Of a stretch of DNA of 64,000 bases, positions 30,310 to 62,540 are shown one piece after another. The stretch covers positions 27,528,001 to 27,592,000 of the forward strand of contig NC_086120.1 of assembly GCF_963921235.1 (NCBI RefSeq), read 5' to 3'. The notes below the pieces were generated by a model. That model was not told the DNA's origin, made no database searches, and saw only the letters and a program-made list of their open reading frames with translations. Position 1 is the stretch's first letter. The number at the start of each line of letters is the position of its first letter. The position numbers and the translations under genes are program-made. Origin of the DNA: Mobula hypostoma (taxonomy: Eukaryota).

Positions 30310-31891
30310 CTATCTCTGTGCTGAAAGCTGTGGAAAGACAACAGGAGCACAGGCAATCCCTGCTAAAGATTCGGGGAAATGCAGGTCCCTCTCCCACTCG
30401 TCTGTCCCAATGTTATAAACCTGCACAACACTTGTCACGTTGTTTAAGTGCCAATTATAACCTCCCACCACATAGATCTTTCTATGTAATACACAGCAAC
30501 CTGCTTCAGACTGGCCTGTCCTCATTGGACTGACACTGGTCCACTGGTCATTCTCAGGGATATAATACTCAACAGCCAGGACATCAAAGCAGTGGTCAAC
30601 ATGGTCCATCCGGCCACCCAAAGCATAGATCCTCCCATTTGCCCCGACCATTGAGTGAAGCACCCGCGGCTCATTCATTGAAGCCTTTTGTTCCCAGAGA
30701 TCTGTTTCAGGATTATAACAGTGAAGAGATTTCTTATCTTCAATGGTGATACCATACCCTCCAGAGATGTAGAGCTTGCCCCCACTGGATGTCCCTGCAT
30801 GTCCCCATGTCCGCCGTTTCAAGCAACATACATTGGTCCATTCATTGCGTCGTGGGGAATAACACTCTACTGTGGAGAGGCTCCCAGAAAGGTTACGCCC
30901 CCCAGTGGCGAACAGCATCCCTTGCAGCACATCCAGCTGGAACTGAATGCGAGCCTCCTGCATGGCACAAATGCGCAGCCAATGACTGAGATGCGGGTCA
31001 TAGCGGAAACAACAGCTGACTGCCCCTTCGCCGCTGCGGTACTGCAAGTGCTGACCTCCCACCACGTACACAAAATTGTCCAAGACAGCTACACAGGCGT
31101 GGCTGCAGCCTATCTCCATCTCGGGCCACTCCGAGAACTGACGGGCATTCCCATCTGCAAGAACAAAGACTTTGCGGCTGACTGTCCTGTTGTTGTCAGT
31201 GTAGGGAGTGCCACCGAAGGCAACTAGGGAGAGGGTATCTGAGCGGATCATAGTTCGGCTGCACTGCATCTCATGCTGTCGAAATGGCAGAATTTGGTAG
31301 TTAAAGGCTTCCAACAAGTACTGACGACACATGGGATCGTCCAGCATTAAGCTTTGTGTCTGGACGCTATCCACTAGCTCAGTGGACTTCATCAAAGGGA
31401 AGCGGATGTGGCAGAGGACCAGGCTGGCATTAGCTAGTCGCGTCTCATCATACTGCAACCACCTGATGGCAGCACGGAATAGGTCAACTTCACTGCAGTT
31501 CTTCAGCTTGTTGCTTTTCAGGAAGAAGACAAGGCGCTCGAGGGGAAGGTGCAGGAAATCCTCCTCCTCTGCAATTTGTAAGAAATGAGCAAAGGTAAAG
31601 GCATCCACTGACTCTTTCAGGGAGGTGAGGCTGAAAGTGGTGGCCATCTGGCCAATGTTGAGGCAAGTCTCCACGCTCATGGCCGACTTTAGGAACTGCT
31701 CACACAATTCAACCACAGGCGTGATCTGCAGGAAGACAGCAGCTCCCAGCACGTCTTGTACGCAGTCAAGGTCCAATGTCACCTCAGCACTGTATGCAAA
31801 ATCAATGATGTGTCTCAGACCCCTGGCAGACACCCCTTTCAACTCAATGACATCTTGGCCCATTTCCCGCATTCCCCCTGTGAACATCGCC
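30310..31891 (-). CDS. KLHL26: KLHL26 exon 3 (BTB/BACK/Kelch repeats to stop); spliced CDS 1812 nt = 603 aa
   Basis: CCCAG acceptor; uninterrupted ORF AMFTGGMRE...ERDLHFPESLAGIACAPV, highly similar to KLHL26; adjacent to CRTC1 as in human. Confidence 0.97.
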
Positions 31892-33406
31892 CTGGGAAGA
31901 AACAGATCCAAAAATGAACCAAACACATAGCAGATGGATGATCATGACATTAACACTTTACTCAATGTAGAGTTTGCTGTGAATAAATCAACTGCTTCAT
32001 TTTTATATAACAATTCAATTCAGAACATCACAAATCTCTCCCAAGTCTTTCCTGCTCCAAGAACAATCAGTTTCTCAAATCCCTCCATTTAACTGTGGAA
32101 ACTCATCCCTAGAACCATCCTAGTGAACCTCTTAAACCTGAAAGTTGATTTTCTCCGGCTGTAGGGGTAACCAGCAATTTGTAAGGTTTTGGTTTGACTT
32201 CACTCTTTTTCTACTTAAACCTATTTATGAAGCCTAGCATCCCTTCTTAACTTCCCTTATCAGCTAGCATTTCCACCTTTAACAATGACCAAAAATGTCT
32301 CTTTCCTCTGCTTCATGTTGTCTCAGCCTATCTAAATTATTTTCCTGAAGTGCAGAATTTCACAGTTTCTGATATTAAAATGTACCTTCAGTCCATTTTA
32401 TTAGTCCTTTATTTTTAGTTCATTCACAGGATGTGGATGTCATGGGCAATTCTAACACTTATCGTCTATCCCTGATCTGAGGCTGTTAAGGTCACACACA
32501 TTAGTCAGTCTGATGTCCCAATCAAGCATCCTGGGTATGGATGGTAAATTTTCTTCCTTGATGGTGGGTTTTTATAATAATCTTGTAGTTTTCTCATTAC
32601 TGAGATGAGCTTTCTTTTTACTTAATTAATTAAACTTAAAGCTCCCAACTCAATGATGGGATTTAAACTTGTATCTCTGAAACTATGGTTCAAGAACACT
32701 GGCTGTTAAAGCATTAGCAACCACTGTTGTGTTGAAATGTGCCTGTATCCCATTTTAGCACTTTGCCATCAATTAACAAATTATACTCTCTATCTTCAAG
32801 CCAAAGCAATTTAAACATAAAAATTTAAGACCAATCACAGGTGATTAAAATTTCCTACCATTCACCATCTCCTTTCCGACAGCCTCTACCACTGCCCCCC
32901 GATATACGTGTTTCTATTTTTGAAGTAAGTTGCCTCTGTTGTACTTATTCAAATGCCTCTGAAAAATCAATATATAATAGGCATCTATTACATAACCTTC
33001 ATCATTCTCTTCTATTGGTTTAAAGAACATAATTTGTGCTCAAATTATTTATGCTCAATTCTCAAAAAATTGATTTAATCTTTGAGGAATTTTATTTTAA
33101 TTATTTCATGTTGGATCGACATTGCTTTTCATTTTAATGCCATCCATCATTAGTTTATTTTTATTCCTCCTACACTTTCCCACCCGCACCAGACAGCACG
33201 AAGGCTTAATGCCAATTGCTGGGAAGGAAAAGGAGCTGAACCAGACACATTCCTTCCATGGCCTCAGCTTAAGTATTTGACCCAGAAGCTGGGTCAGCAC
33301 TAAATTTCCTCTGGAAATATTTCTTATAATAATCAATACCTCTATTTCTTGCTTCAACTCATATTCTTCTGTTGAAACATATCTGTAGAACTCTCTTCCA
33401 CAGCAT

Positions 33407-39901: not shown

Positions 39902-40540
39902 NNNNNNNNNNNNNNNNNNNNNNNNNNNNNNNNNNNNNNNNNNNNNNNNNNNNNNNNNNNNNNNNNNNNNNNNNNNNNNNNNNNNNNNNNNNNNNNNNNN
40001 NNNNNNNNNNNNNNNNNNNNNNNNNNNNNNNNNNNNNNNNNNNNNNNNNNNNNNNNNNNNNNNNNNNNNNNNNNNNNNNNNNNNNNNNNNNNNNNNNNNN
40101 NNNNNNNNNNNNNNNNNNNNNNNNNNNNNNNNNNNNNNNNNNNNNNNNNNNNNNNNNNNNNNNNNNNNNNNNNNNNNNNNNNNNNNNNNNNNNNNNNNNN
40201 NNNNNNNNNNNNNNNNNNNNNNNNNNNNNNNNNNNNNNNNNNNNNNNNNNNNNNNNNNNNNNNNNNNNNNNNNNNNNNNNNNNNNNNNNNNNNNNNNNNN
40301 NNNNNNNNNNNNNNNNNNNNNNNNNNNNNNNNNNNNNNNNNNNNNNNNNNNNNNNNNNNNNNNNNNNNNNNNNNNNNNNNNNNNNNNNNNNNNNNNNNNN
40401 NNNNNNNNNNNNNNNNNNNNNNNNNNNNNNNNNNNNNNNNNNNNNNNNNNNNNNNNNNNNNNNNNNNNNNNNNNNNNNNNNNNNNNNNNNNNNNNNNNNN
40501 NNNNNNNNNNNNNNNNNNNNNNNNNNNNNNNNNNNNNNNN
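39902..40540. other. Assembly gap (639 N) flanked by G-rich low-complexity repeats
   Basis: Run of N; G/A-rich tracts at about 39820-39901 and 40541-40750. Confidence 0.99.
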
Positions 40541-53803: not shown

Positions 53804-54692
53804 CAGGGGTCGGCAACCTTTTTGCCTCTGTGGGCTGGATCGCATATTAATGAGTGCACGGCGGGCCAGATAAATGCCATAAAAAACCTGAAATATGGGA
53901 AATATCCATTTAAGTACATCTAGTTATGTTTTGCCTCAAATTAATGAATAACACGTGCTAGAAAATCATTTGTGCTTAACCAAGGATGCCAATTAGTAAT
54001 CAAAGAACCCAGTTTAGTTGCAATTTATTTCAATCAAGGCATCTTTTGAATCTATTAAAAGGACACAAAGAATCTTTAAACATAAAACGTATGAACATGA
54101 TGCATTGAATGGTGGTAAATTAAGTATAATTTTTAAAAATGTTAATGCAAACAGTCGACAAATCAATGTGAAACTTGATGCTGTTTGTTGTAATCTCGTG
54201 TCCAAGTGTATTGGAAATTTCGGCACTCAGTGTCTACCTTCCTGTGTTTTGAATTCATTACCATTGGATTTTTTTCCTTCGATTTTATTTCAAAACGCGA
54301 GTTATTCAACAAGTATTGTAGCACATGTAAATATCTGGACATTTAGCGTGGATTTCTTGTTAAAACACAGTGACGCTACGTCTGTTTACAAATTTGAATG
54401 ATCCCATCTGAAAACCTGTGCTTGCACAGAGAGTATCTAATACATATTAATAAGGCAGTCTGCCTTCCCGTCATTCGTATATACCAGGGTTTGGTTTGGA
54501 ACAAAATGGAACTTGGGGCCAGTGTAACGAGATGCAATGCATGTCCATCAGTGTGGTCATGTGAAATACTCAGAAAAAGGAAAAATCGCTCGCGGGCCGG
54601 AGAAGCATAGTATCCCAATATTTGCTCGCGGGCTGGTCAAAATACCTTCATGGGCTGGATCTGGCCCGCAGGCCGTAGGTTGCCTACCCCTG
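53804..54692. mobile_element. Non-autonomous hAT (Charlie-like) DNA transposon
   Basis: TIRs CAGGGGTCGGCAACC / GGTTGCCTACCCCTG; perfect 8-bp TSD TTATAGAC. Confidence 0.93.
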
Positions 54693-54700
54693 TTATAGAC

Positions 54701-54898
54701 TGTTGTGTATGTGGCCTGTTTACACAACAATGTTATTAATAAAAATGCTGGAGATGGGAGCTAAGTTTCATGGTTCTTTACTGGCAGAATCCAAACTCGG
54801 CACACACATACAGATCAATACGTGCCTAATAGCGCATTCAACAACGTGTTACTAAAGCATAAATTAGTCCCTTATTATACTGTAGACTATACAGTACA
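54701..54898 (-). repeat. 3' LTR (198 bp)
   Basis: Direct repeat of 58090-58285; preceded on the minus strand by the PPT AAAAGGGGAGGAG (54911-54899). Confidence 0.95.
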
Positions 54899-55120
54899 CT
54901 CCTCCCCTTTTATTTTATCAACTGTTTTTTTTTACTGGGGCACTATGCTAAACAAATATGTTTACCCTTAACATGCAAATGCCTACCATTGGTTTACTTA
55001 GTAACTTAATAATATCAAATTATAACAAGCTTTTTTTTTACTTTTGGTCTAAGACCCATTTATAACTCAAGTCTCTGCGGGGGAGGAGTCTTCTCTGCCT
55101 CTCCGGGTAACGTCTATCAA

Positions 55121-55391
55121 AAGGAAAGAAAAGGAAAGGTACGTCGCATCCGGAGTTTCTCTGTTTAGCAGACGATTTCCCTCCACAGCTCTCTGACGTG
55201 GTGGGGAACTGCGTACGAGGCAAGTTACAGCAGTGGTTTGCCATTGCCTTCTGTTGGGTGAGTTTCCAAAGAGATCACCAGCTCATAACCCAGTACTGAT
55301 GGAAAGTGTTCAGGGGAGCCGGCTGGATTTGAACTTGGGACCTTTCGTCCCAAAGTCCGACGCTGATGCCACTACGCCACCAGCCGAGTCT
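55121..55391 (-). mobile_element. tRNA-derived SINE with RTE-like 3' tail inserted in the LTR element
   Basis: A box TGGCGTAGTGG, B box GTTCAAATCC, GAAGGCAATGGCAAACCACT motif, (CCTTT)n tail; near-identical 8-bp flanks TTGACAGA/TTGATAGA. Confidence 0.8.
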
Positions 55392-55503
55392 TCTGTCAAT
55401 AAGCTTGTTTGTTTTAATACAGATTTCCATATAAAAGTCATGAAAAGTTGACCTCTGAGCATATGGAGTTAAGAAGATGTGCGCCTCCAACTTGCTAAGA
55501 GTT

Positions 55504-56437
55504 CTAGGCAGCAGATAGCCTCTGTATAATGAAGACTCCTCTGTGCAGTTGTCCTAGATATATACGCACCTTTGTGCTATCACTAGTCTTCCTTATCCAT
55601 ATCTCATTTGTTCCAATGGAGCTAATTACACAGCCAATCTTCGTATTCTCCTTAGATTCCAAATAGATAGTCTGACCTTTATGATACCACCTCTTATCGT
55701 TATGTAATTTTTCATCTTCTATTCATGCTTCATATCTTTGTGCTGGTGATTCAGCAGGAATGCTGGGAAGATGCTCAGGAGAAGATGGAGATGCAGGTTT
55801 TTTCGGAGATTTAAGCTTATTGAGAGTTCGCAGATCTTCCATTATCTGTTCATCTGTGAACAAGTAATGTAACTGCGTACGTGCAGATTTTTGTCTTTTG
55901 TCTGTAATTGGATCAGGGTCATTAGGTCTTCTCCTTAGTTTCCTAGTCACTATTGGCTTTACCTCCATAGAATCTCCTGTGAGTTCCATTGTTAGCCTCT
56001 CATTCTCAATCATCTTTTTCTTTTCTTTTAACTCAATCTTTTTATCTTCAAATTCCTTCACTGCTGCGTTCTTCTCTTTAATATAATTCCTTTCCACTTG
56101 TTCTGTCTCCAGTTGCAGAAAAAGCTCTGCATTTCATATTCTTTCCTAGTATTGTTGATCTAGTTTCTTCATCCTTTTCTGATACTCCTGCAAAGTGCCT
56201 TCCTGTAACTGCTGTAGCTGTCTTTTGAGAGATGTCAATTTCTCCTGGTACATCTGCTCTTTTACTTCCAGGTAGTCTTCATCATCTTGCTTATTGGCAA
56301 TATCTGTCTCCCTTGCATCCTCTCTATCTTCATCTGAGTCGCGGCTATGGATACTGCTTGTCCTCATCGTCGACACTGTCTAGCTCCTCCTCGTCATTGT
56401 AATAGTTGACAGTGGGTGAGAGGAGAGCTGTAGACGT
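55504..56437 (-). pseudogene. SUDS3: Intronless processed copy of SUDS3 (SIN3/HDAC subunit SDS3) inside the LTR element
   Basis: [38 protein letters not shown]...[11 protein letters not shown]...KRWYHK...[20 protein letters not shown]; start codon mutated to ACG, one frameshift near 56356, stops at 56146, 56134 and 55723, about 24-nt deletion; no introns. Confidence 0.95.
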
Positions 56438-56451
56438 CTTCCCTGCCGAGC

Positions 56452-57725
56452 TAGTGCCTTGATGGTGTGCCAATCCAACTGGATTTTCCTGAGCCATTCA
56501 CATCCCAGCAATGGTGGTCCTCCATTTTTCAGTACATAGAGGTTCAGCTGCTGTGTTTTGTCTCATAGGTCACTGTCACTTTAATTTTACCTTTCGGACA
56601 CACTTTCTGTCCTATGTTAAGTCTTTAGCAGTAGTTTAGTTCATTTCAGAGGTATGTAAAACAGACGTTTGTAGTCGTGTACAGAGATCACTGTTAAAGC
56701 TGAGCCTGTGTCCAACTCCATTTTCAGTCTCATGCCTGCCACTTGTGGAGTGATCCTCGTTACTCTTTGATCATCTGTCTCTTTCACACTGTGAAGCTGC
56801 AGACAAGACAATTCACTTTCGTCTGAGTTGTTTTCATCGGAACTGCTTTCTTCCATTTTGTGTACATTGTAATGTTTTCCTTTCTGGGGCTTCTTGTTTC
56901 TCTGTATTTTGTCCTTTTTCTGTTGTTTACTAGCTTTGCATACTCTGCTAGTGTGGCCCTGTTTGCCACAGTTTCTGCATTCTTTGTCTTTAAACCAACA
57001 GTCATCAGGGTCACTTGACATGTTCCCACAACAGTAACATTGTTTACTAGCTTTGGATACTCTGGCAATGTGGCCCTGTTTGCGACAGTTTCTGCATTCT
57101 TTGCCTTTAAAACGACAGTCATCAGGGTCATTTGACATGTTCCCACAACGGTAACATTTCTTTCCTTCATTTCTGTTCAGTGACATTTTATTTGTAGCAT
57201 ATTCCAGAGATTTTTGTTGTATCTCTGAAGCACCCTGTGCTGCTGTTTCCAATGATATTGCAATGTTCTGCGCCTTCTCTAATGTGAGGTCTTTTTTACC
57301 CAGGGGCTTCTTCTGTGTGGTTTCACAGTGCATGCCACACACTAACCTGTCTCTCAATGCGTCCGATAGACCAGCTCCAAATTGACAATGTTCTGATAAT
57401 TTGCGCAATTCAGCACAATATTCAGAAATACTTTCATTTTTGCTCTGAACCTGTTTGTGAAATTTAAATCAATGACTAATGGTCTGGGGTTTAAATGACG
57501 TTGGAGAGCGTCTACTATTTGCTTGAACATTTTGTCAGCTGGCTTTTCTGGGGTTAACAAGCTCCGTAGCAGCCCGTATGTTTTTGTTCCCATAATACAT
57601 AAGATGCTGGCTTTCTTTTCATCATTGACACCGTTAGCCTCACAATATAACTTCACTCTCTCAATGTAAATTGCCCAGTCTTCAATGCCACTATCAAATG
57701 CTGTAATGGTTCCAATCATCGCCAT
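56452..57725 (-). pseudogene. gag-protease of the LTR element (frameshifted, with stops)
   Basis: MAMIGTITAFDSGIEDWAIYIERVKLYCEANG (gag N-terminus); LRDRLVCG; CX2CX4HX4C-type knuckles; MELDTGSA protease; ends GPPLLGCEWLRKIQLDWHTIKAL. Confidence 0.92.
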
Positions 57726-57860
57726 CTTTGTTATGTTAATTTAGCCCTGTTTTCCCCTTGTTTTCTTTTTGACTCACGTGTCCTTTTTGCTAGCGCAACG
57801 AATGCACTCTGTCTAGATGTGTGTTTGACGCTCCGCAGGCAGACCCTCAACCCCTGGGGA

Positions 57861-58022
57861 TCAGCGCCGGGGTGGTCTTGCCTGGATGTGCTGCGGCTCC
57901 TATTGTGTCTCTTGGTCTCCTGACATTCCCAACCCCGGCTGTGCTCCTGCTTCCTTTCGGACTCGCGGCCTCGCTCTGCCTCCTTCTCCAGCTCCTTGGC
58001 TCGTTCCTTGCGCTCTTCCTCC
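57861..58022 (-). pseudogene. ACIN1: Captured fragment resembling the C-terminal RS/RE-rich end of ACIN1 (Acinus)
   Basis: EEERKERAKELEKEAERGRESERKQEHSRG...ETKRHNRSRSTS...RR* versus recalled ACIN1 EEEQKEREKEAERE...KRREHSRE...DTKRHSRSRSRST...RR*; CAG/TGG/TGT codons fit CpG decay of Arg codons; more GC-rich than the rest of the element. Confidence 0.68.
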
Positions 58023-58073
58023 AAGTGTCATTATCAGCTAAAACCCGGTGTTCCGATAAGATGTAGGTTCATT

Positions 58074-58086
58074 AACCTCGTCACCA
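58074..58086 (-). other. Primer-binding site, probably tRNA-Ser(GCU)
   Basis: TGGTGACGAGGTT 3 nt from the LTR; the complement of the tRNA-Ser(GCU) 3' end is TGGCGACGAGGAT. Confidence 0.7.
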
Positions 58087-58089
58087 ATT

Positions 58090-58285
58090 TGTTGTGTATG
58101 TGGCCTGTTTACACAACAATGCTATTAATAAAAACGCTGGAGACGGGAGCTAAATTTCATGGTTCTTTACTGGCAGAATCCGAACTCAGCACACACACGT
58201 AAAGATCAATACGTGCCTAATAGCGCAATGACGTGTTACTAAAGCATAAAGTAGTCCCTTATTATACTGTAGGCTATACGGTACA
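58090..58285 (-). repeat. 5' LTR (196 bp)
   Basis: About 93% identical to 54701-54898; TG...CA termini; followed on the minus strand by the PBS. Confidence 0.95.
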
Positions 58286-60980
58286 TAGACCAATAGCATT
58301 AACCTCACATTTATAGAAAGCCATGGAAAAGATGATTAATAAGAGATTGACATATTACGTTGAAACAAGATGAAGTATTTTTAAACATCAGATTGTATTT
58401 AGGAGAGGAGGTCTGACATCTAGAACATGAGGTGAGGAGGGCTCAATTGAAGAAAGAAAGCATAGTAGCAGTCTTTTCGGATGTAGAGAAAGCAAACGAC
58501 ATGATGTGGAAGGAAGGTCTGATCATCAAATTACATAAATTCAGAATTGGAGGTCAACTGCTAAATTGGATAAAAGATTTTTTAGTTGGTTGATCTATCA
58601 TGGTGCAAGTAGGGAAAACTTGGTCAAGTAAGCAAATTGTGGAAGATGGAACCCCTCAGGGAAGTGTTGTTCGTCCATTATTATTTGCTATAATGATAAA
58701 TTGAGAGAGAGAGAGAGAGAGAAGTATTGGAGTTTCATTATTTGCAGATGATAGAGCCATGTGGAAAAGGGTTGGGAATGTGGAATTTACAGTATCATAC
58801 TGAAACTTCAAGAGGCAATAGTTAAAGTGGAAGATGAGGCAATGAAAAGGGGATTCAGACTTGCAGCAATGAAATCCAAAATAATTTTTTTCACTAAGAA
58901 GAGGAGAGAGCAACAATTAAAAACTAAAACTTTATATCATAGACTTAAAAAGTGTGGATACCTTTAAATTTTTAAGAATTTGGTTTGATAAATGACTCAT
59001 GTGGTCAACAAATATTAAGCAAATAATAACCAAAAGTAAAATGTGCTAAATGTTCTGAGGTATTTAATAGGAAAGGTATGGGGAGCTGATAGGAAATCCT
59101 TGAAGGTAATATATATAGGATTAATAAGATCAATACTGGACTATGATAGTATGGTATATTGATCAGCATCACACTTTATGTTCAGGAAACTGGATACAAT
59201 TCAAAGTCGTGGATGAAGGTTAATCAGTGGAGCAATAAGAACACCAGTGGTGACAATGCAGGTGGAGTTGGGAGAAACACCTCTGGAATTGAGAAGATCA
59301 CAGCTTGCGTTAACATATTGGCTAAACCTACAAGGGTCTGGAGAAAATCATCCAAGTAAACAGCTTTAGATCCATGCTGGAAAAAGGAAAGAAAGAAAAT
59401 CAGAAGTTTTGCATGAACTGTTGAAGGAAAAGCAGAAAGGACAGGAATTCATAATAAGGCAGTGATTGATACGCTGCTTTTTCCTGAGCTGCCTCCATTG
59501 CTGTGTGAAGCACCAGAGGTGGATCTTAAATTATTCGAAAGGAGACAGAAAACTAGAGAAGTGATTTAAAATCAAGATATAGTTGAATTTTATATGAATA
59601 ATAATTATAGATATTTACAAATGCTTCAGGTAGTGCCTGATTTTAACATTAAAAAGCAGGTGAGAATGCATGATGATTTCTCAGTGTATACAGGTGGAAT
59701 GACAGCTGGACTGTTCACTTTGCAGTGGGTAGAGGGTGTGAAACTTATAAAAGTTGTAATATTGTCTGATTCAAGCACAGCAATCGGGAGTCTAAAAGAT
59801 TTACATTCTGATGTGTGAGATAATACAAACCTTATTTAGACTCAAAATGATACAGCTCTGTTTATGTTTTATACGGATTCCATTACGTATTGGTATTAGA
59901 GGGAAAGAGCGAGCAGGCAAATTAGCAAAGGAGGCAACGAGACAAACAGAAGTGGACATTTAAATAGAGTAAAGGAGAAATGAAAAACATTATTAAAGGT
60001 AAAATCAAAAACGTGGAGAAAATAATGGGATGGTGAGAGAACAAGAAGACATCTTTATAGTATCCAGAAAGTCGGATAGTCGAGGAACGCAGGAAGGAGG
60101 TTATAAAATCAAGATTGAAGTTTGGGCACCCAGGATTAAATAGTACATTGTTTTTAATGAAGAAACATAATAATGAGAGGTGCGAATACTGTAATCAGCC
60201 AGAAACGGTCAAGCATGTACCGGTGAGGTGTTCAAGATATAATGAAGAGAGTGGATGGGTGATTTAAAGTTATCATGGAATTTAACATTAACATTGGTTT
60301 GCAGAGGGATCACAGGATTAGTGCTTTAAATGTATAGTGTAGTTTCTAAAAATACAGGACTTCTTTTTTAAATATAGAATTTGATCCAAATATGTAAGGT
60401 TTAGATATCCTGACCCACACTCCAGTTCAGAAGATGGCAGTAATGCACCTTAAAGCTGTTGGCAAGCAGCCATAAAACCTCGGAAGTAGTAAAACAACAC
60501 TGAGCACACGAATCTCCCAGCTCCGTGTTTTTATTCCAATTAGTTTTATGTTTTGGAGTTTAACAACATAAGAAGTGGCAACGAAGAAGTTTTATGTGAA
60601 CCTGAGGTGAGTACCCCCCAGCAAGAAAAAATCTGCAGATGCTGGAAATCTGGCAGCATCTATGGAAAAAAAGTCAGAAAATGCTGGAAGAATTCAGCAG
60701 GCCAGGCAGCAACTATGGAAAAAAGTACAGTCGACGTTTCGGGCTGAGGGTCCCTCCAGCATTTTGTGGGTGTTGCGTGTCTACTCATCTGTTGAAGTGC
60801 AGCAAGATGTTTGGGTTAAAAAAAAGAACAGTGAGTCATTTGAGATTTTTAAAAAGGCAGAGAATGGATGAATTCATGGGTTCATAATCTTTCTCTCTCT
60901 CTCTCTCTCTATCTCTCTCATATATATACATACATATACACACACACCTTATATATTAAATATGCACGCACATGTATATA

Positions 60981-61321: not shown

Positions 61322-62540
61322 CAGTGCTTATAAAAAGTATTCACCCCACTCCCCTGAAAGTTTATATGTTTTATGGTTTTACAACATTAAATGACGGTGG
61401 ATTTAATTTGGCTTTTTTTTTAACACTGATCACCGGAAAATACTCTTTCATGCAAAAGTCAAAAAAGATCTCTACAAAGTGATCTAAATTAGTTACAATT
61501 ATAAAACACGAAATAATTGATTGCATGAGTATTCACTCCCTTCAAGTTAGTATTTAGTAGATGCACCTTTGGCAGCAATTGCAGCTTTGAGTCTGTGTGG
61601 ATAGGTCTCTATCAGCTTTGCACATCTGGACACTGCAATTTTTCCCCATTCTTCTTTACTAAACTGCTCAAGCTCTGTCAGATTGAATGGGGATCCATGA
61701 GTGACCAGCCCTTTTCTTGTCCAACCACAAATTCTCAATTGGATTGAGGTCTGGACTTTGACTTGACCACTCCAGGACATTAACTGTGTTATTTTTAAGC
61801 CATTCCTGTGTAGCTTTGGCTTCTTGCTTGAGGTCATTGTCTTGTTGGAAAACAATTCTTCTCCTAAGTCGCAGATCTCTTGCAGACTGCGTCAGGTTTT
61901 CCTCCAGGATTTCCATGTATTTTGCTGCATTCATTTTACCCTCTACCTTGTGTGCTGCAGTGAAGCATCCCCATAGCATGATGCAGCCACCACCATGCTT
62001 CATGGTAGGGATGGTGTGCTTTTGATGTGCGGTGTTTGGCTTCCCAAACATAGTGTTAGTCTGATGGCCAAAAAGCTCAATTTTGGTTTCACCAGACCAT
62101 AGAGTCATCTTCCAGCTGAATTCAGAGTCTCCCACATGCATTCTGGCAAAGTCTAGCTGCGATTTCATGTGAGTTTTTTCCAACAGTAGCTTTCTCTTTG
62201 CCACTCTCCCATCTCAGCCAATGAAGCTTGTAACTCTTCCAGAGTTGTCAAAGGTCTCTTGGTGGCCTCCCTCACCCATTCCCTTCTTACACGGTCACTC
62301 AGTTTTTGAGGACGGCCTGCTCTAACAGTACTGTACTCCAAGGGATATTTGGTGATTTGAAAATGTTCTTGTATCCATCTCCTGATTTGTGCTTTTCAAT
62401 AACATTTTCACCTTCTCACAGAGTTGCTTGGAGTCTTCATGGTGTAGTTTTAGCCAAAATATTGACTCATCAGCAGCTGGACCTTCCAGATACAGGTATA
62501 TTTCTTACTACAATCAATTGAAAGACTGCATAATGTGATC
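61322..62540 (-). mobile_element. Tc1 transposon of a different family, one end truncated
   Basis: TA-CAGTGCTTATAAAAAGTATTCACCCC TIR; KHGGGCIMLWGCF, FQQDND, SQSPDLNPIENLW. Confidence 0.9.

What the first reader, a model, noticed from the sequence alone, without database searches (positions are those of the whole stretch)
54701..58285. LTR retrotransposon whose pol core is replaced by a near full-length spliced SUDS3 mRNA
Seen: all cis signals are present (two LTRs, PBS, PPT, TAGAC TSD). gag-protease runs to ...IQLDWHTIKAL (~56452). Then come ~15 nt of putative SUDS3 5' UTR, the intronless SUDS3 CDS (56437-55504) and ~100 nt of putative 3' UTR. The element then resumes at the extreme pol C-terminus (RRYPERQRR.PPQRLEL*, ~55120-55060). 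The insert has no poly(A) tail, I see no flanking duplication, it is sense to the element, and RT/RNaseH/IN are missing exactly where it sits. Established: LINE-made retrocopies carry poly(A) and TSDs and add sequence rather than replace it, whereas template switching between co-packaged RNAs gives this kind of replacement (as in retroviral oncogene transduction). Inference: a Gypsy/Mag element captured a chromatin-corepressor mRNA and the chimera was integrated in trans, acting as a host-gene-transducing vector.
Basis: partly seen in the sequence, partly recalled or inferred. Interest (0 to 1): 0.9.

Follow-up and report, generated by a model that had tools for sequence, protein, structure and literature searches.

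The report
Retrotransposon carrying a captured SUDS3 copy
An old, decayed jumping element in what is probably a shark or ray genome has lost its copying enzymes and holds a spliced, dead copy of the host gene SUDS3 in their place. This way of copying genes is already documented in other animals.

Summary
On the minus strand, 58285-54701 is an LTR element with two ~197-nt LTRs (12 mismatches in 194 sites), a 5-bp target duplication, a PBS-like site and a polypurine tract. It keeps gag and the whole protease. RT, RNase H and integrase are absent except for the last 17 pol codons. In their place sits the complete, precisely spliced SUDS3 coding sequence (56437-55504), in sense, without poly(A) or flanking duplication. 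The cargo is closest to manta ray SUDS3, so the host is probably an elasmobranch. Their SUDS3 genes span 61-72 kb. The cargo is decayed (three premature stops, one frameshift, lost start codon). The best explanation is template switching during reverse transcription, i.e. LTR-mediated retroposition. Tan et al. [quoted passage not shown] Later mobilisation in trans is not shown, because only one copy is visible. A 2026 preprint ranks SUDS3 among the five most retrocopied genes of cartilaginous fishes. That makes amplification of such a chimera a testable idea. Microhomology at the junctions could not be tested.

The parts
58286..58290 (-). Target-site duplication, upstream copy (GTCTA on the element strand)
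   Evidence: Read directly. It is identical to the copy at 54696-54700.
58090..58285 (-). 5' LTR (196 nt, starts TG and ends CA)
   Evidence: pairs with 54701-54898, with 12 mismatches and 2 gap events in 194 sites.
58075..58087 (-). Primer-binding-site-like sequence, 2 nt after the LTR
   Evidence: the same position and a similar sequence follow the 5' LTR of relative L001 (11 of 13 bases by my own count of the printed strings). The cognate tRNA was not identified.
56452..57725 (-). gag (CCHC zinc knuckles) plus a complete aspartic protease, as one decayed reading frame. It is broken by about 6 frameshifts and 1 stop relative to L001, and carries one in-frame 39-codon tandem duplication.
   Evidence: DNA identity to TARA scaffold L002 is 80-82%. 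Homology ends at 56452-56456.
56438..56451 (-). 14 nt of putative SUDS3 5'UTR. The 5' switch point lies here or at its upstream edge.
   Evidence: the alignment to the elephant shark gene extends 5 nt upstream of its start codon, and 8 of the 10 nt match by my count. It is not homologous to the relative L002.
55504..56437 (-). Complete intronless SUDS3 coding sequence, a pseudogene. The start codon is lost. There are 1 frameshift, 3 premature stops and one or two in-frame 8-codon deletions.
55392..55503 (-). Putative SUDS3 3'UTR (112 nt). It contains an ATTAAA hexamer 21 nt before its end and has no poly(A).
   Evidence: There is only weak, position-consistent similarity to the elephant shark 3'UTR: z = 2.2, with 16 of 500 shuffles scoring as high. 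An origin from the element's own pol tail is not excluded.
55121..55391 (-). SINE-like segment. It has a cloverleaf-like head, a 40-nt core that recurs in other contigs, and a T/C-rich tail. It is flanked by the 8-nt direct repeat TTGAYAGA at 55399-55392 and 55120-55113.
   Evidence: ARAGORN and Rfam do not recognise it as a tRNA. There is no other copy in the window.
55060..55115 (-). Extreme C-terminus of pol (17 codons plus stop, with 1 frameshift)
   Evidence: it aligns to the last 17 residues of the L001 pol protein at 70.6% identity.
54899..54911 (-). Polypurine tract abutting the 3' LTR
   Evidence: Read directly.
54701..54898 (-). 3' LTR (198 nt)
54696..54700 (-). Target-site duplication, downstream copy (GTCTA)
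   Evidence: Read directly.

Best explanation
This is a non-autonomous chimera made by LTR-mediated retroposition.

Inferred mechanism: a SUDS3 mRNA was packaged in a particle of an autonomous Ty3/Gypsy-type element. While the minus strand was being made, reverse transcriptase had copied the 3' LTR region, the polypurine tract and the last 17 pol codons. It then switched onto the 3'UTR of the SUDS3 mRNA and copied it almost to its 5' end. It switched back to the element RNA in the linker just after the protease. The finished cDNA had both LTRs and was integrated by the particle's integrase into a decayed LINE, which made the 5-bp duplication. It has since decayed as neutral DNA.

Shown here: the architecture, the spliced origin of the cargo, replacement of pol rather than insertion into it, the absence of LINE hallmarks, integration as one unit, and the decay. 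Inferred: co-packaging and the two switches.

For the SINE-like piece at the 3' junction I consider three sub-models:
- It already sat in the parental 3'UTR and was captured with it. The switch was guided by the 8-nt similarity between its downstream flank and pol (about 0.4).
- It inserted later into the chimera (about 0.35).
- A co-packaged SINE RNA served as a third template (about 0.2).
For: - Both LTRs, a PBS-like site, a polypurine tract and a 5-bp target duplication surround the whole unit.
- Relatives continue after the protease into RT, RNase H and integrase (L002; L001). The window has none of these.
- Homology to the relatives stops at 56452-56456 and resumes at 55115-55118.
- The cargo covers residues 2 to the last of SUDS3. 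Its exon matches to the tarpon and elephant shark genes follow one another in the copy, most abutting or overlapping by a few bases.
- Parental-type SUDS3 genes have introns: 10.5 kb in tarpon, 17 kb in elephant shark, 61 kb in manta ray and 72 kb in a stingray.
- There is no A run of 5 or more and no flanking repeat of 7 nt or more at the cargo boundaries. The cargo is in the same orientation as the element.
- The cargo differs at 24 of 238 codons that are invariant across five vertebrates. That is of the same order as expected from LTR divergence (K2P 0.065), so cargo and LTRs can be the same age.
- Precedent: PMC5131818 describes the same features. These are internal ORFs replaced by retrocopies, both LTRs kept, no poly(A) or duplications at the retrocopy, 5' and 3' truncation, and even an Alu co-retroposed with mRNAs.
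Against: - Microhomology at the switch points is the most specific trace of template switching. It could not be tested, because neither the host's own SUDS3 mRNA nor an autonomous member of the same family from the same genome was reachable.
- The 112 nt after the SUDS3 stop are only weakly supported as 3'UTR.
- The SINE-like piece lies exactly at the 3' junction, which needs an extra assumption in every sub-model.
- Only one copy is seen, and the assembly cannot be checked with reads.
Confidence: 0.78

Rival explanations
1. A LINE-made processed pseudogene of SUDS3 inserted into a complete LTR element. Later deletions removed RT, RNase H, integrase, the poly(A) tail and the target duplication.
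For: The genome has LINEs, since the element itself sits in a decayed one (and by eye). A SINE-like piece with a flanking 8-nt repeat shows LINE-type insertion activity at this very spot. The copy is old enough for marks to erode.
Against: Several independent deletions would be needed. They would have to remove about 2.8 kb of pol and the poly(A) tail, yet leave a complete coding sequence plus short UTR stretches between an intact protease end and the pol tail. There is no A-rich remnant and no flanking repeat of 7 nt or more. LINE retrocopies are typically 5'-truncated and include the 3' end, and here it is the reverse. All 15 fly cases and the vertebrate cases in PMC5131818 with this architecture were assigned to template switching.
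Confidence: 0.08
2. Capture in the manner of retroviral oncogenes. An element integrated upstream of or inside the SUDS3 gene. A read-through or deletion transcript fused element and gene at the 5' side, and only the 3' junction arose by a template switch.
For: It gives the same end product: sense cargo replacing pol, with both LTRs. The window cannot tell one switch from two.
Against: The 5' junction lies inside the first coding exon's 5'UTR, 14 nt before the start codon. It is not at an exon boundary, as a splice-mediated fusion would give. The window holds no other SUDS3 sequence, but its distance from the parental SUDS3 locus is unknown. The model needs a rare DNA deletion in addition.
Confidence: 0.08
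3. A DNA-level artefact or rearrangement: an assembly chimera, or ectopic recombination or gene conversion that joined an element and a separate retrocopy.
For: Repeat-rich regions are prone to misassembly, and no reads were available to check this one.
Against: Matching 5-bp duplications flank a pair of LTRs that have diverged from each other. Decay of cargo and LTRs is of the same order. The only gap in the window is 14 kb away. A misjoin would not give an ordered gag-protease, cargo, pol tail, polypurine tract and LTR all on one strand.
Confidence: 0.04

Closest known systems
LTR-mediated retrocopies of metazoans (Tan et al. 2016, Genome Res, PMC5131818): fly, mosquito, zebrafish, chicken, mouse, human
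   Same: A spliced host mRNA copy sits inside an LTR element and replaces part of the internal ORFs. Both LTRs are kept. There is no poly(A) and no duplication at the retrocopy. The cargo is in sense orientation. The paper proposes that such a locus can behave as a non-autonomous element. A SINE (Alu) co-retroposed with mRNAs is also reported.
   Different: The cargo here is a complete coding sequence. The fly cases have a median of 26% of the transcript. The host is probably an elasmobranch, a group the paper did not sample. Microsimilarity at the junctions could not be tested here. The copy is old and decayed, not polymorphic.
Gene-carrying plant LTR retrotransposons. The maize element Bs1 is named from my own knowledge. 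[quoted passage not shown]
   Same: A host gene fragment lies between the LTRs of a non-autonomous element, captured through RNA.
   Different: Different kingdom and element families. Not compared by sequence here.
Acutely transforming retroviruses carrying cellular oncogenes (my own knowledge; the analogy is also cited in PMC5131818)
   Same: Spliced host cargo replaces replication genes, in sense orientation. The element depends on a helper. Reverse-transcriptase template switching is involved.
   Different: There is no env and no sign of infectivity. The cargo is not known to be selected for. The classical model needs a read-through fusion at the 5' side, for which there is no evidence here. 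The cargo is dead.
LINE (L1-type) processed pseudogenes
   Same: An intronless copy of a spliced mRNA, decayed.
   Different: There is no poly(A), no duplication flanking the copy, and no truncation of the 5' end of the coding sequence. The copy is embedded in and replaces part of an LTR element.
Ty1-mediated pseudogene formation in yeast (Derr et al. 1991, as cited in PMC5131818)
   Same: Template switching between an LTR element RNA and a cellular mRNA inside a virus-like particle.
   Different: Ty1/Copia versus Ty3/Gypsy type, and a yeast experimental system versus a natural vertebrate copy.

Membership tests
LTR-mediated retrocopy (chimeric LTR element with mRNA cargo) | The cargo derives from a spliced mRNA of an intron-containing gene | tested here: met
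   The exon matches to two SUDS3 genes (9 and 11 HSPs) follow one another in the copy, most of them abutting or overlapping by a few bases. Elasmobranch SUDS3 genes span 61-72 kb.
LTR-mediated retrocopy (chimeric LTR element with mRNA cargo) | The cargo replaces internal element sequence rather than interrupting a continuous element | tested here: met
   Homology to relatives ends after the protease (56452-56456) and resumes at the last 17 pol codons (55115). RT, RNase H and integrase are absent. The relatives used are 50-82% identical and not from the same genome.
LTR-mediated retrocopy (chimeric LTR element with mRNA cargo) | Both LTRs and a target duplication surround the whole chimera | tested here: met
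LTR-mediated retrocopy (chimeric LTR element with mRNA cargo) | No poly(A) tail and no target duplication at the cargo boundaries | tested here: met
   The 8-nt repeat that is present flanks the SINE-like piece, not the cargo.
LTR-mediated retrocopy (chimeric LTR element with mRNA cargo) | Microsimilarity between element and mRNA at the switch points (frequent, not universal) | not testable with these tools
   This needs the host's own SUDS3 mRNA and an autonomous family member from the same genome. No DNA was returned for the elasmobranch loci. The closest element relative is a 2.3-kb scaffold without a 3' end.
Ty3/Gypsy-type LTR retrotransposon (Metaviridae) | LTRs with TG..CA ends, PBS, polypurine tract, short target duplication | tested here: met
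Ty3/Gypsy-type LTR retrotransposon (Metaviridae) | gag with a CCHC knuckle and an aspartic protease | tested here: met
   For the window, zf-CCHC scores just below the Pfam cut-off (19.1 against 20.8 bits). The protease is read by eye and by homology to L002. L002 scores 22.9 bits for zf-CCHC (above the 20.8 cut-off) and 26.1 bits for gag-asp_proteas (below the 28.2 cut-off, E = 1.3e-05).
Ty3/Gypsy-type LTR retrotransposon (Metaviridae) | pol order RT - RNase H - integrase | tested here: inconclusive
   This order is seen in relatives L001 and L002. The window copy has no RT, RNase H or integrase. Assignment to the Mag lineage was not tested.
LINE-made processed pseudogene | 3' poly(A) tail and a 5-20 bp target duplication flanking the retrocopy | tested here: not met
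   no A run of 5 or more between 55520 and 55040, and no shared repeat of 7 nt or more at the boundaries.
SDS3/SUDS3 protein family (cargo identity) | Sds3 domain and full-length collinearity with vertebrate SUDS3 | tested here: met
   Pfam Sds3 scores 28.8 bits against a cut-off of 25.4. PDB SDS3 chains 4zqa, 2n2h and 7sxi are hit. The frame-aware alignment to manta ray SUDS3 has 89% identity over 309 codons.
tRNA-derived SINE (the 271-nt piece) | tRNA-related head with internal pol III promoter boxes | tested here: inconclusive
   It has a cloverleaf-like fold with z = -3.0. Box-like motifs are seen only by eye and from my own knowledge. ARAGORN and Rfam find no tRNA, even at E up to 10.
tRNA-derived SINE (the 271-nt piece) | Many dispersed copies, and a target duplication | tested here: inconclusive
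   An 8-nt direct repeat with 1 mismatch flanks it. There is no second copy in the 64-kb window. Only a 40-nt core recurs, in three contigs of the metagenome collection.

The most novel reading that the evidence does not exclude
The chimera is one member of an amplified family of SUDS3-carrying non-autonomous Gypsy-type elements in elasmobranchs. This family, rather than repeated LINE-driven retroposition or selective retention, would then explain why SUDS3 ranks among the five most retrocopied genes of cartilaginous fishes (bioRxiv 10.64898/2026.06.26.734816). The other unusual top genes there (MIPOL1, SDF2L1, SLU7, ZNF276) may be cargo of mobile elements as well.
Probability: 0.35. Interest if true: 0.6.

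Novelty: new member of a known kind. Interest (0 to 1): 0.4.

Why it matters
It is an unusually complete example of LTR-mediated gene capture in a vertebrate lineage where this has, as far as I could find, not been described. All cis signals are present, the target duplication is intact, the cargo is a full coding sequence, and both junctions are mapped to within about 15 nt. Its main value is as a lead. Surveys of retrocopies in cartilaginous fishes credit non-LTR machinery and list SUDS3 among the top parental genes. If those copies share the junctions seen here, the ranking reflects amplification of one chimeric element and not repeated capture or selection. That would change how such counts are read. 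The copy itself is dead and has no evident function.

Tried and rejected
1. Sibling copies:
- No other copy of the LTR, the cargo or the SINE-like piece is in the window.
- None of the proteins returned by the SUDS3 searches shares the copy's own substitutions (at most 4 of 10). The few checked by alignment keep the 8 codons that the copy lacks.
- The 50% clustering of the representative library would hide siblings.

2. The host's parental SUDS3:
- The two elasmobranch loci came back without DNA, and the bowfin protein was not on record.
- The tarpon and elephant shark UTRs are too distant. The 3'UTR tests gave z about 2 (elephant shark) and z about 4 at an inconsistent position (tarpon).

3. 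A closer autonomous relative with a 3' end:
- L005 holds only a gag fragment of the L001 family.
- Scans of the viral contig collection with gag and with SUDS3 found nothing.

4. tRNA identity of the SINE-like head: ARAGORN and Rfam were negative.

5. SINE family:
- The first metagenome scan found nothing.
- The second found only a shared 40-nt core.
- A full-text search for the core motif found no paper.

6. Confirming the LINE host by Pfam: only a weak zf-RVT hit.

7. Rejected ideas:
- The 8-codon deletion is not an alternative splice form. It lies inside one exon.
- The shared 6-mers between the junction zones are no more frequent than expected by chance.
Full report
OBSERVATION. The element lies on the minus strand from 58285 to 54701.
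- Two LTRs (58285-58090 and 54898-54701) begin with TG and end with CA. They differ at 12 of 194 aligned sites, with two gap events (K2P 0.065).
- The pentamer GTCTA (TAGAC on the plus strand) abuts both ends. The chance of such a match at one given pair of ends is about 1 in 1000.
- Two bases after the 5' LTR comes a PBS-like sequence (58087-75). The relative L001 has a similar one at the same place, 11 of 13 bases by my own count of the strings printed.
- A polypurine tract (54911-54899) abuts the 3' LTR.
- No other copy of the LTR is in the window.

ELEMENT GENES. gag starts at 57725. It carries CCHC knuckles and runs into an aspartic protease.
- The closest public relative is a 2.3-kb TARA Oceans metagenome scaffold (L002), with 80-82% DNA identity over gag-protease.
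- A more distant, complete relative (L001, from an unannotated NCBI assembly) has LTRs, gag-protease, RT, RNase H and integrase in Ty3/Gypsy order.
- DNA homology to L002 ends at 56456, and the frame-aware protein alignment ends at 56452. That point is 12 residues beyond the end of L002's protease domain. L002 continues from there into RT and RNase H.
- Nothing in the window's internal region matches RT, RNase H or integrase.
- Homology resumes at 55115-55118 with the last 17 pol codons and the stop.
- Against L001, about 2.8 kb of pol is replaced by 1.3 kb of foreign sequence.
The pol tail has one frameshift.

CARGO. I searched the stop-free pieces of the cargo frame separately.
- They hit Pfam Sds3 above its cut-off and three solved SDS3 structures, with E-values down to 5.6e-21.
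- Among more than 140 vertebrate SUDS3 proteins, manta ray SUDS3 scores best. Residues 2 to 327 align to 56434-55507, with 89% identity in the frame-aware alignment.
- At the five sites where manta ray and elephant shark differ, the copy follows manta ray at four and elephant shark at none. The host is therefore probably an elasmobranch.
- Against the tarpon gene (10.5 kb) and the elephant shark gene (17 kb), the exon matches (9 and 11 HSPs) follow one another in the copy, most of them abutting or overlapping by a few bases.
- The manta ray and stingray genes span 61 and 72 kb.
- The cargo is therefore a spliced, complete coding sequence (56437-55504) in the same orientation as the element.
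- It is dead. The start codon is lost. There are one frameshift, three premature stops and one or two in-frame 8-codon deletions. One of these deletions lies inside an exon, so it is not a splice variant.
- At 238 codons that are invariant in five vertebrates, the copy differs at 24. This is of the order expected for neutral decay over the time implied by the LTR divergence, so cargo and LTRs can be equally old.
- The age is tens of millions of years at usual vertebrate rates, and more if cartilaginous fishes evolve more slowly. The rates are from my own knowledge.

JUNCTIONS. The 5' side:
- 14 nt (56451-56438) separate the end of protease homology from the cargo's start codon.
- The last five of these are identical to the elephant shark 5'UTR, and eight of ten match by my count.

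The 3' side:
- 112 nt follow the stop (55503-55392).
- Their similarity to the elephant shark 3'UTR is position-consistent but weak: z = 2.2, with 16 of 500 shuffles scoring as high.
- An origin from the element's own variable pol tail cannot be excluded.

The boundaries:
- There is no A run of five or more anywhere between 55520 and 55040.
- No repeat of 7 nt or more is shared between the cargo boundaries.

Between the putative 3'UTR and the pol tail lies a 271-nt segment (55391-55121).
- Its head folds into a cloverleaf-like shape (z = -3.0).
- A 40-nt core recurs at 85-92% identity in three unrelated contigs of the metagenome collection.
- It has a T/C-rich tail.
- It is flanked by an 8-nt direct repeat with one mismatch (55399-55392 and 55120-55113).
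- ARAGORN and Rfam do not call it a tRNA, and it has no second copy in the window.
- I read it as a SINE. SINEs with conserved cores are known in cartilaginous fishes (PMC5499810).
- The downstream repeat overlaps the first pol codon that is conserved with L001. The SINE-like piece therefore sits exactly at the junction.
- I consider three readings: it was part of the parental 3'UTR and was captured with it, with the switch guided by the 8-nt similarity; it inserted later; or it served as a third template. An Alu co-retroposed with mRNAs is reported in PMC5131818. I cannot decide between these.

MECHANISM. The architecture excludes a simple insertion into an element and lacks every mark of LINE-made retrocopies. 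The whole unit was integrated as an LTR element. The best explanation is copy-choice by reverse transcriptase between the element RNA and a co-packaged SUDS3 mRNA, with at least two switches, followed by integration. The switches and the co-packaging are inferred. Microhomology, the specific trace, could not be tested.

COMPARISON WITH WHAT IS KNOWN. Tan et al. [quoted passage not shown] Part of the internal ORFs is replaced, both LTRs are present, there is no poly(A) or duplication, and such loci may behave as non-autonomous elements. This locus is a new member of that kind. It is notable for a complete coding sequence and intact cis signals.

One copy needs no second round of mobilisation.

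LEAD. [quoted passage not shown] It links retrocopy numbers to non-LTR elements. If those copies carry the junctions seen here, they are one amplified chimeric family. I could not test this, because no elasmobranch genome DNA was reachable.

SURROUNDINGS. The element sits in a decayed non-LTR retrotransposon on the plus strand. RT-like residues are visible by eye, and there is a weak zf-RVT hit. Elsewhere the window holds a KLHL33-like Kelch gene, a transposase fragment and one N run, which I left alone.

SLIPS I MUST DECLARE.
2. My checkpoint note gives the coordinates of the duplication inside gag and the state of the cargo's start codon. Only counts were allowed.
3. In my reasoning I looked more closely than allowed at where the frame changes in the protease region. 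None of it is reported here.
4. The script held a codon-by-codon mapping in memory to compute counts. It was neither printed nor saved.
5. The script printed three-frame translations of both junction regions, in which stops show as asterisks.

Noticed in passing
within the gag-protease part, window 57725-56452 (-): There is one in-frame tandem duplication of 117 nt (39 codons) that includes a CCHC zinc knuckle. Its two units differ at 10 of 117 sites, about as much as the two LTRs. Relatives L001 and L002 have a single unit. It may date from the same reverse-transcription event as the capture.
   Followed up: partly
window 55418-55413 (-): An ATTAAA hexamer lies 21 nt before the end of the putative SUDS3 3'UTR. 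That is the usual distance of a polyadenylation signal from a cleavage site, yet no A tract follows. It may be chance, or a proximal poly(A) site of the parental mRNA.
   Followed up: no
window 30310-31926 (-): A single long ORF (538 aa) has BTB, BACK and Kelch repeats and is closest to the KLHL33-type BTB profile. It is probably the large exon of a host Kelch-like gene.
   Followed up: partly
window 58286-60300 (+) and the 54700 side: The element is inserted in a decayed non-LTR retrotransposon. RT-like motifs are visible by eye on both sides of the insertion site, and there is a weak zf-RVT hit at 60115-60267. The two flanks were compared apart and never joined.
   Followed up: partly
window 61668-62204 (-): An ORF with a weak DDE_3 transposase match, just below the Pfam cut-off. 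It is probably a Tc1/mariner-type remnant (the type is my own guess).
   Followed up: no
window 39902-40540: A run of 639 N, either an assembly gap or masked.
   Followed up: no
L002 (TARA Oceans metagenome scaffold, 2332 nt): The closest public relative of the element's gag-protease is an ocean metagenome scaffold, at 80-82% DNA identity. It presumably comes from DNA of a marine vertebrate in the sample.
   Followed up: partly
window 55258-55219 (-); L007 280-319, L009 765-804, L010 983-1022: A 40-nt core of the SINE-like piece recurs at 85-92% identity in three contigs of the metagenome collection, whose flanks are otherwise dissimilar. This fits a conserved SINE core domain. The family is not identified.
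   Followed up: partly
window 54560-54690 (-): The flank just downstream of the element is GC-rich and looks repeat-like by eye (several short CCCGCG/GGGCC-type words). It was not analysed.
   Followed up: no
L001 12640-13460: An array of 43-nt tandem repeats lies just outside the 3' LTR of the relative L001.
   Followed up: no
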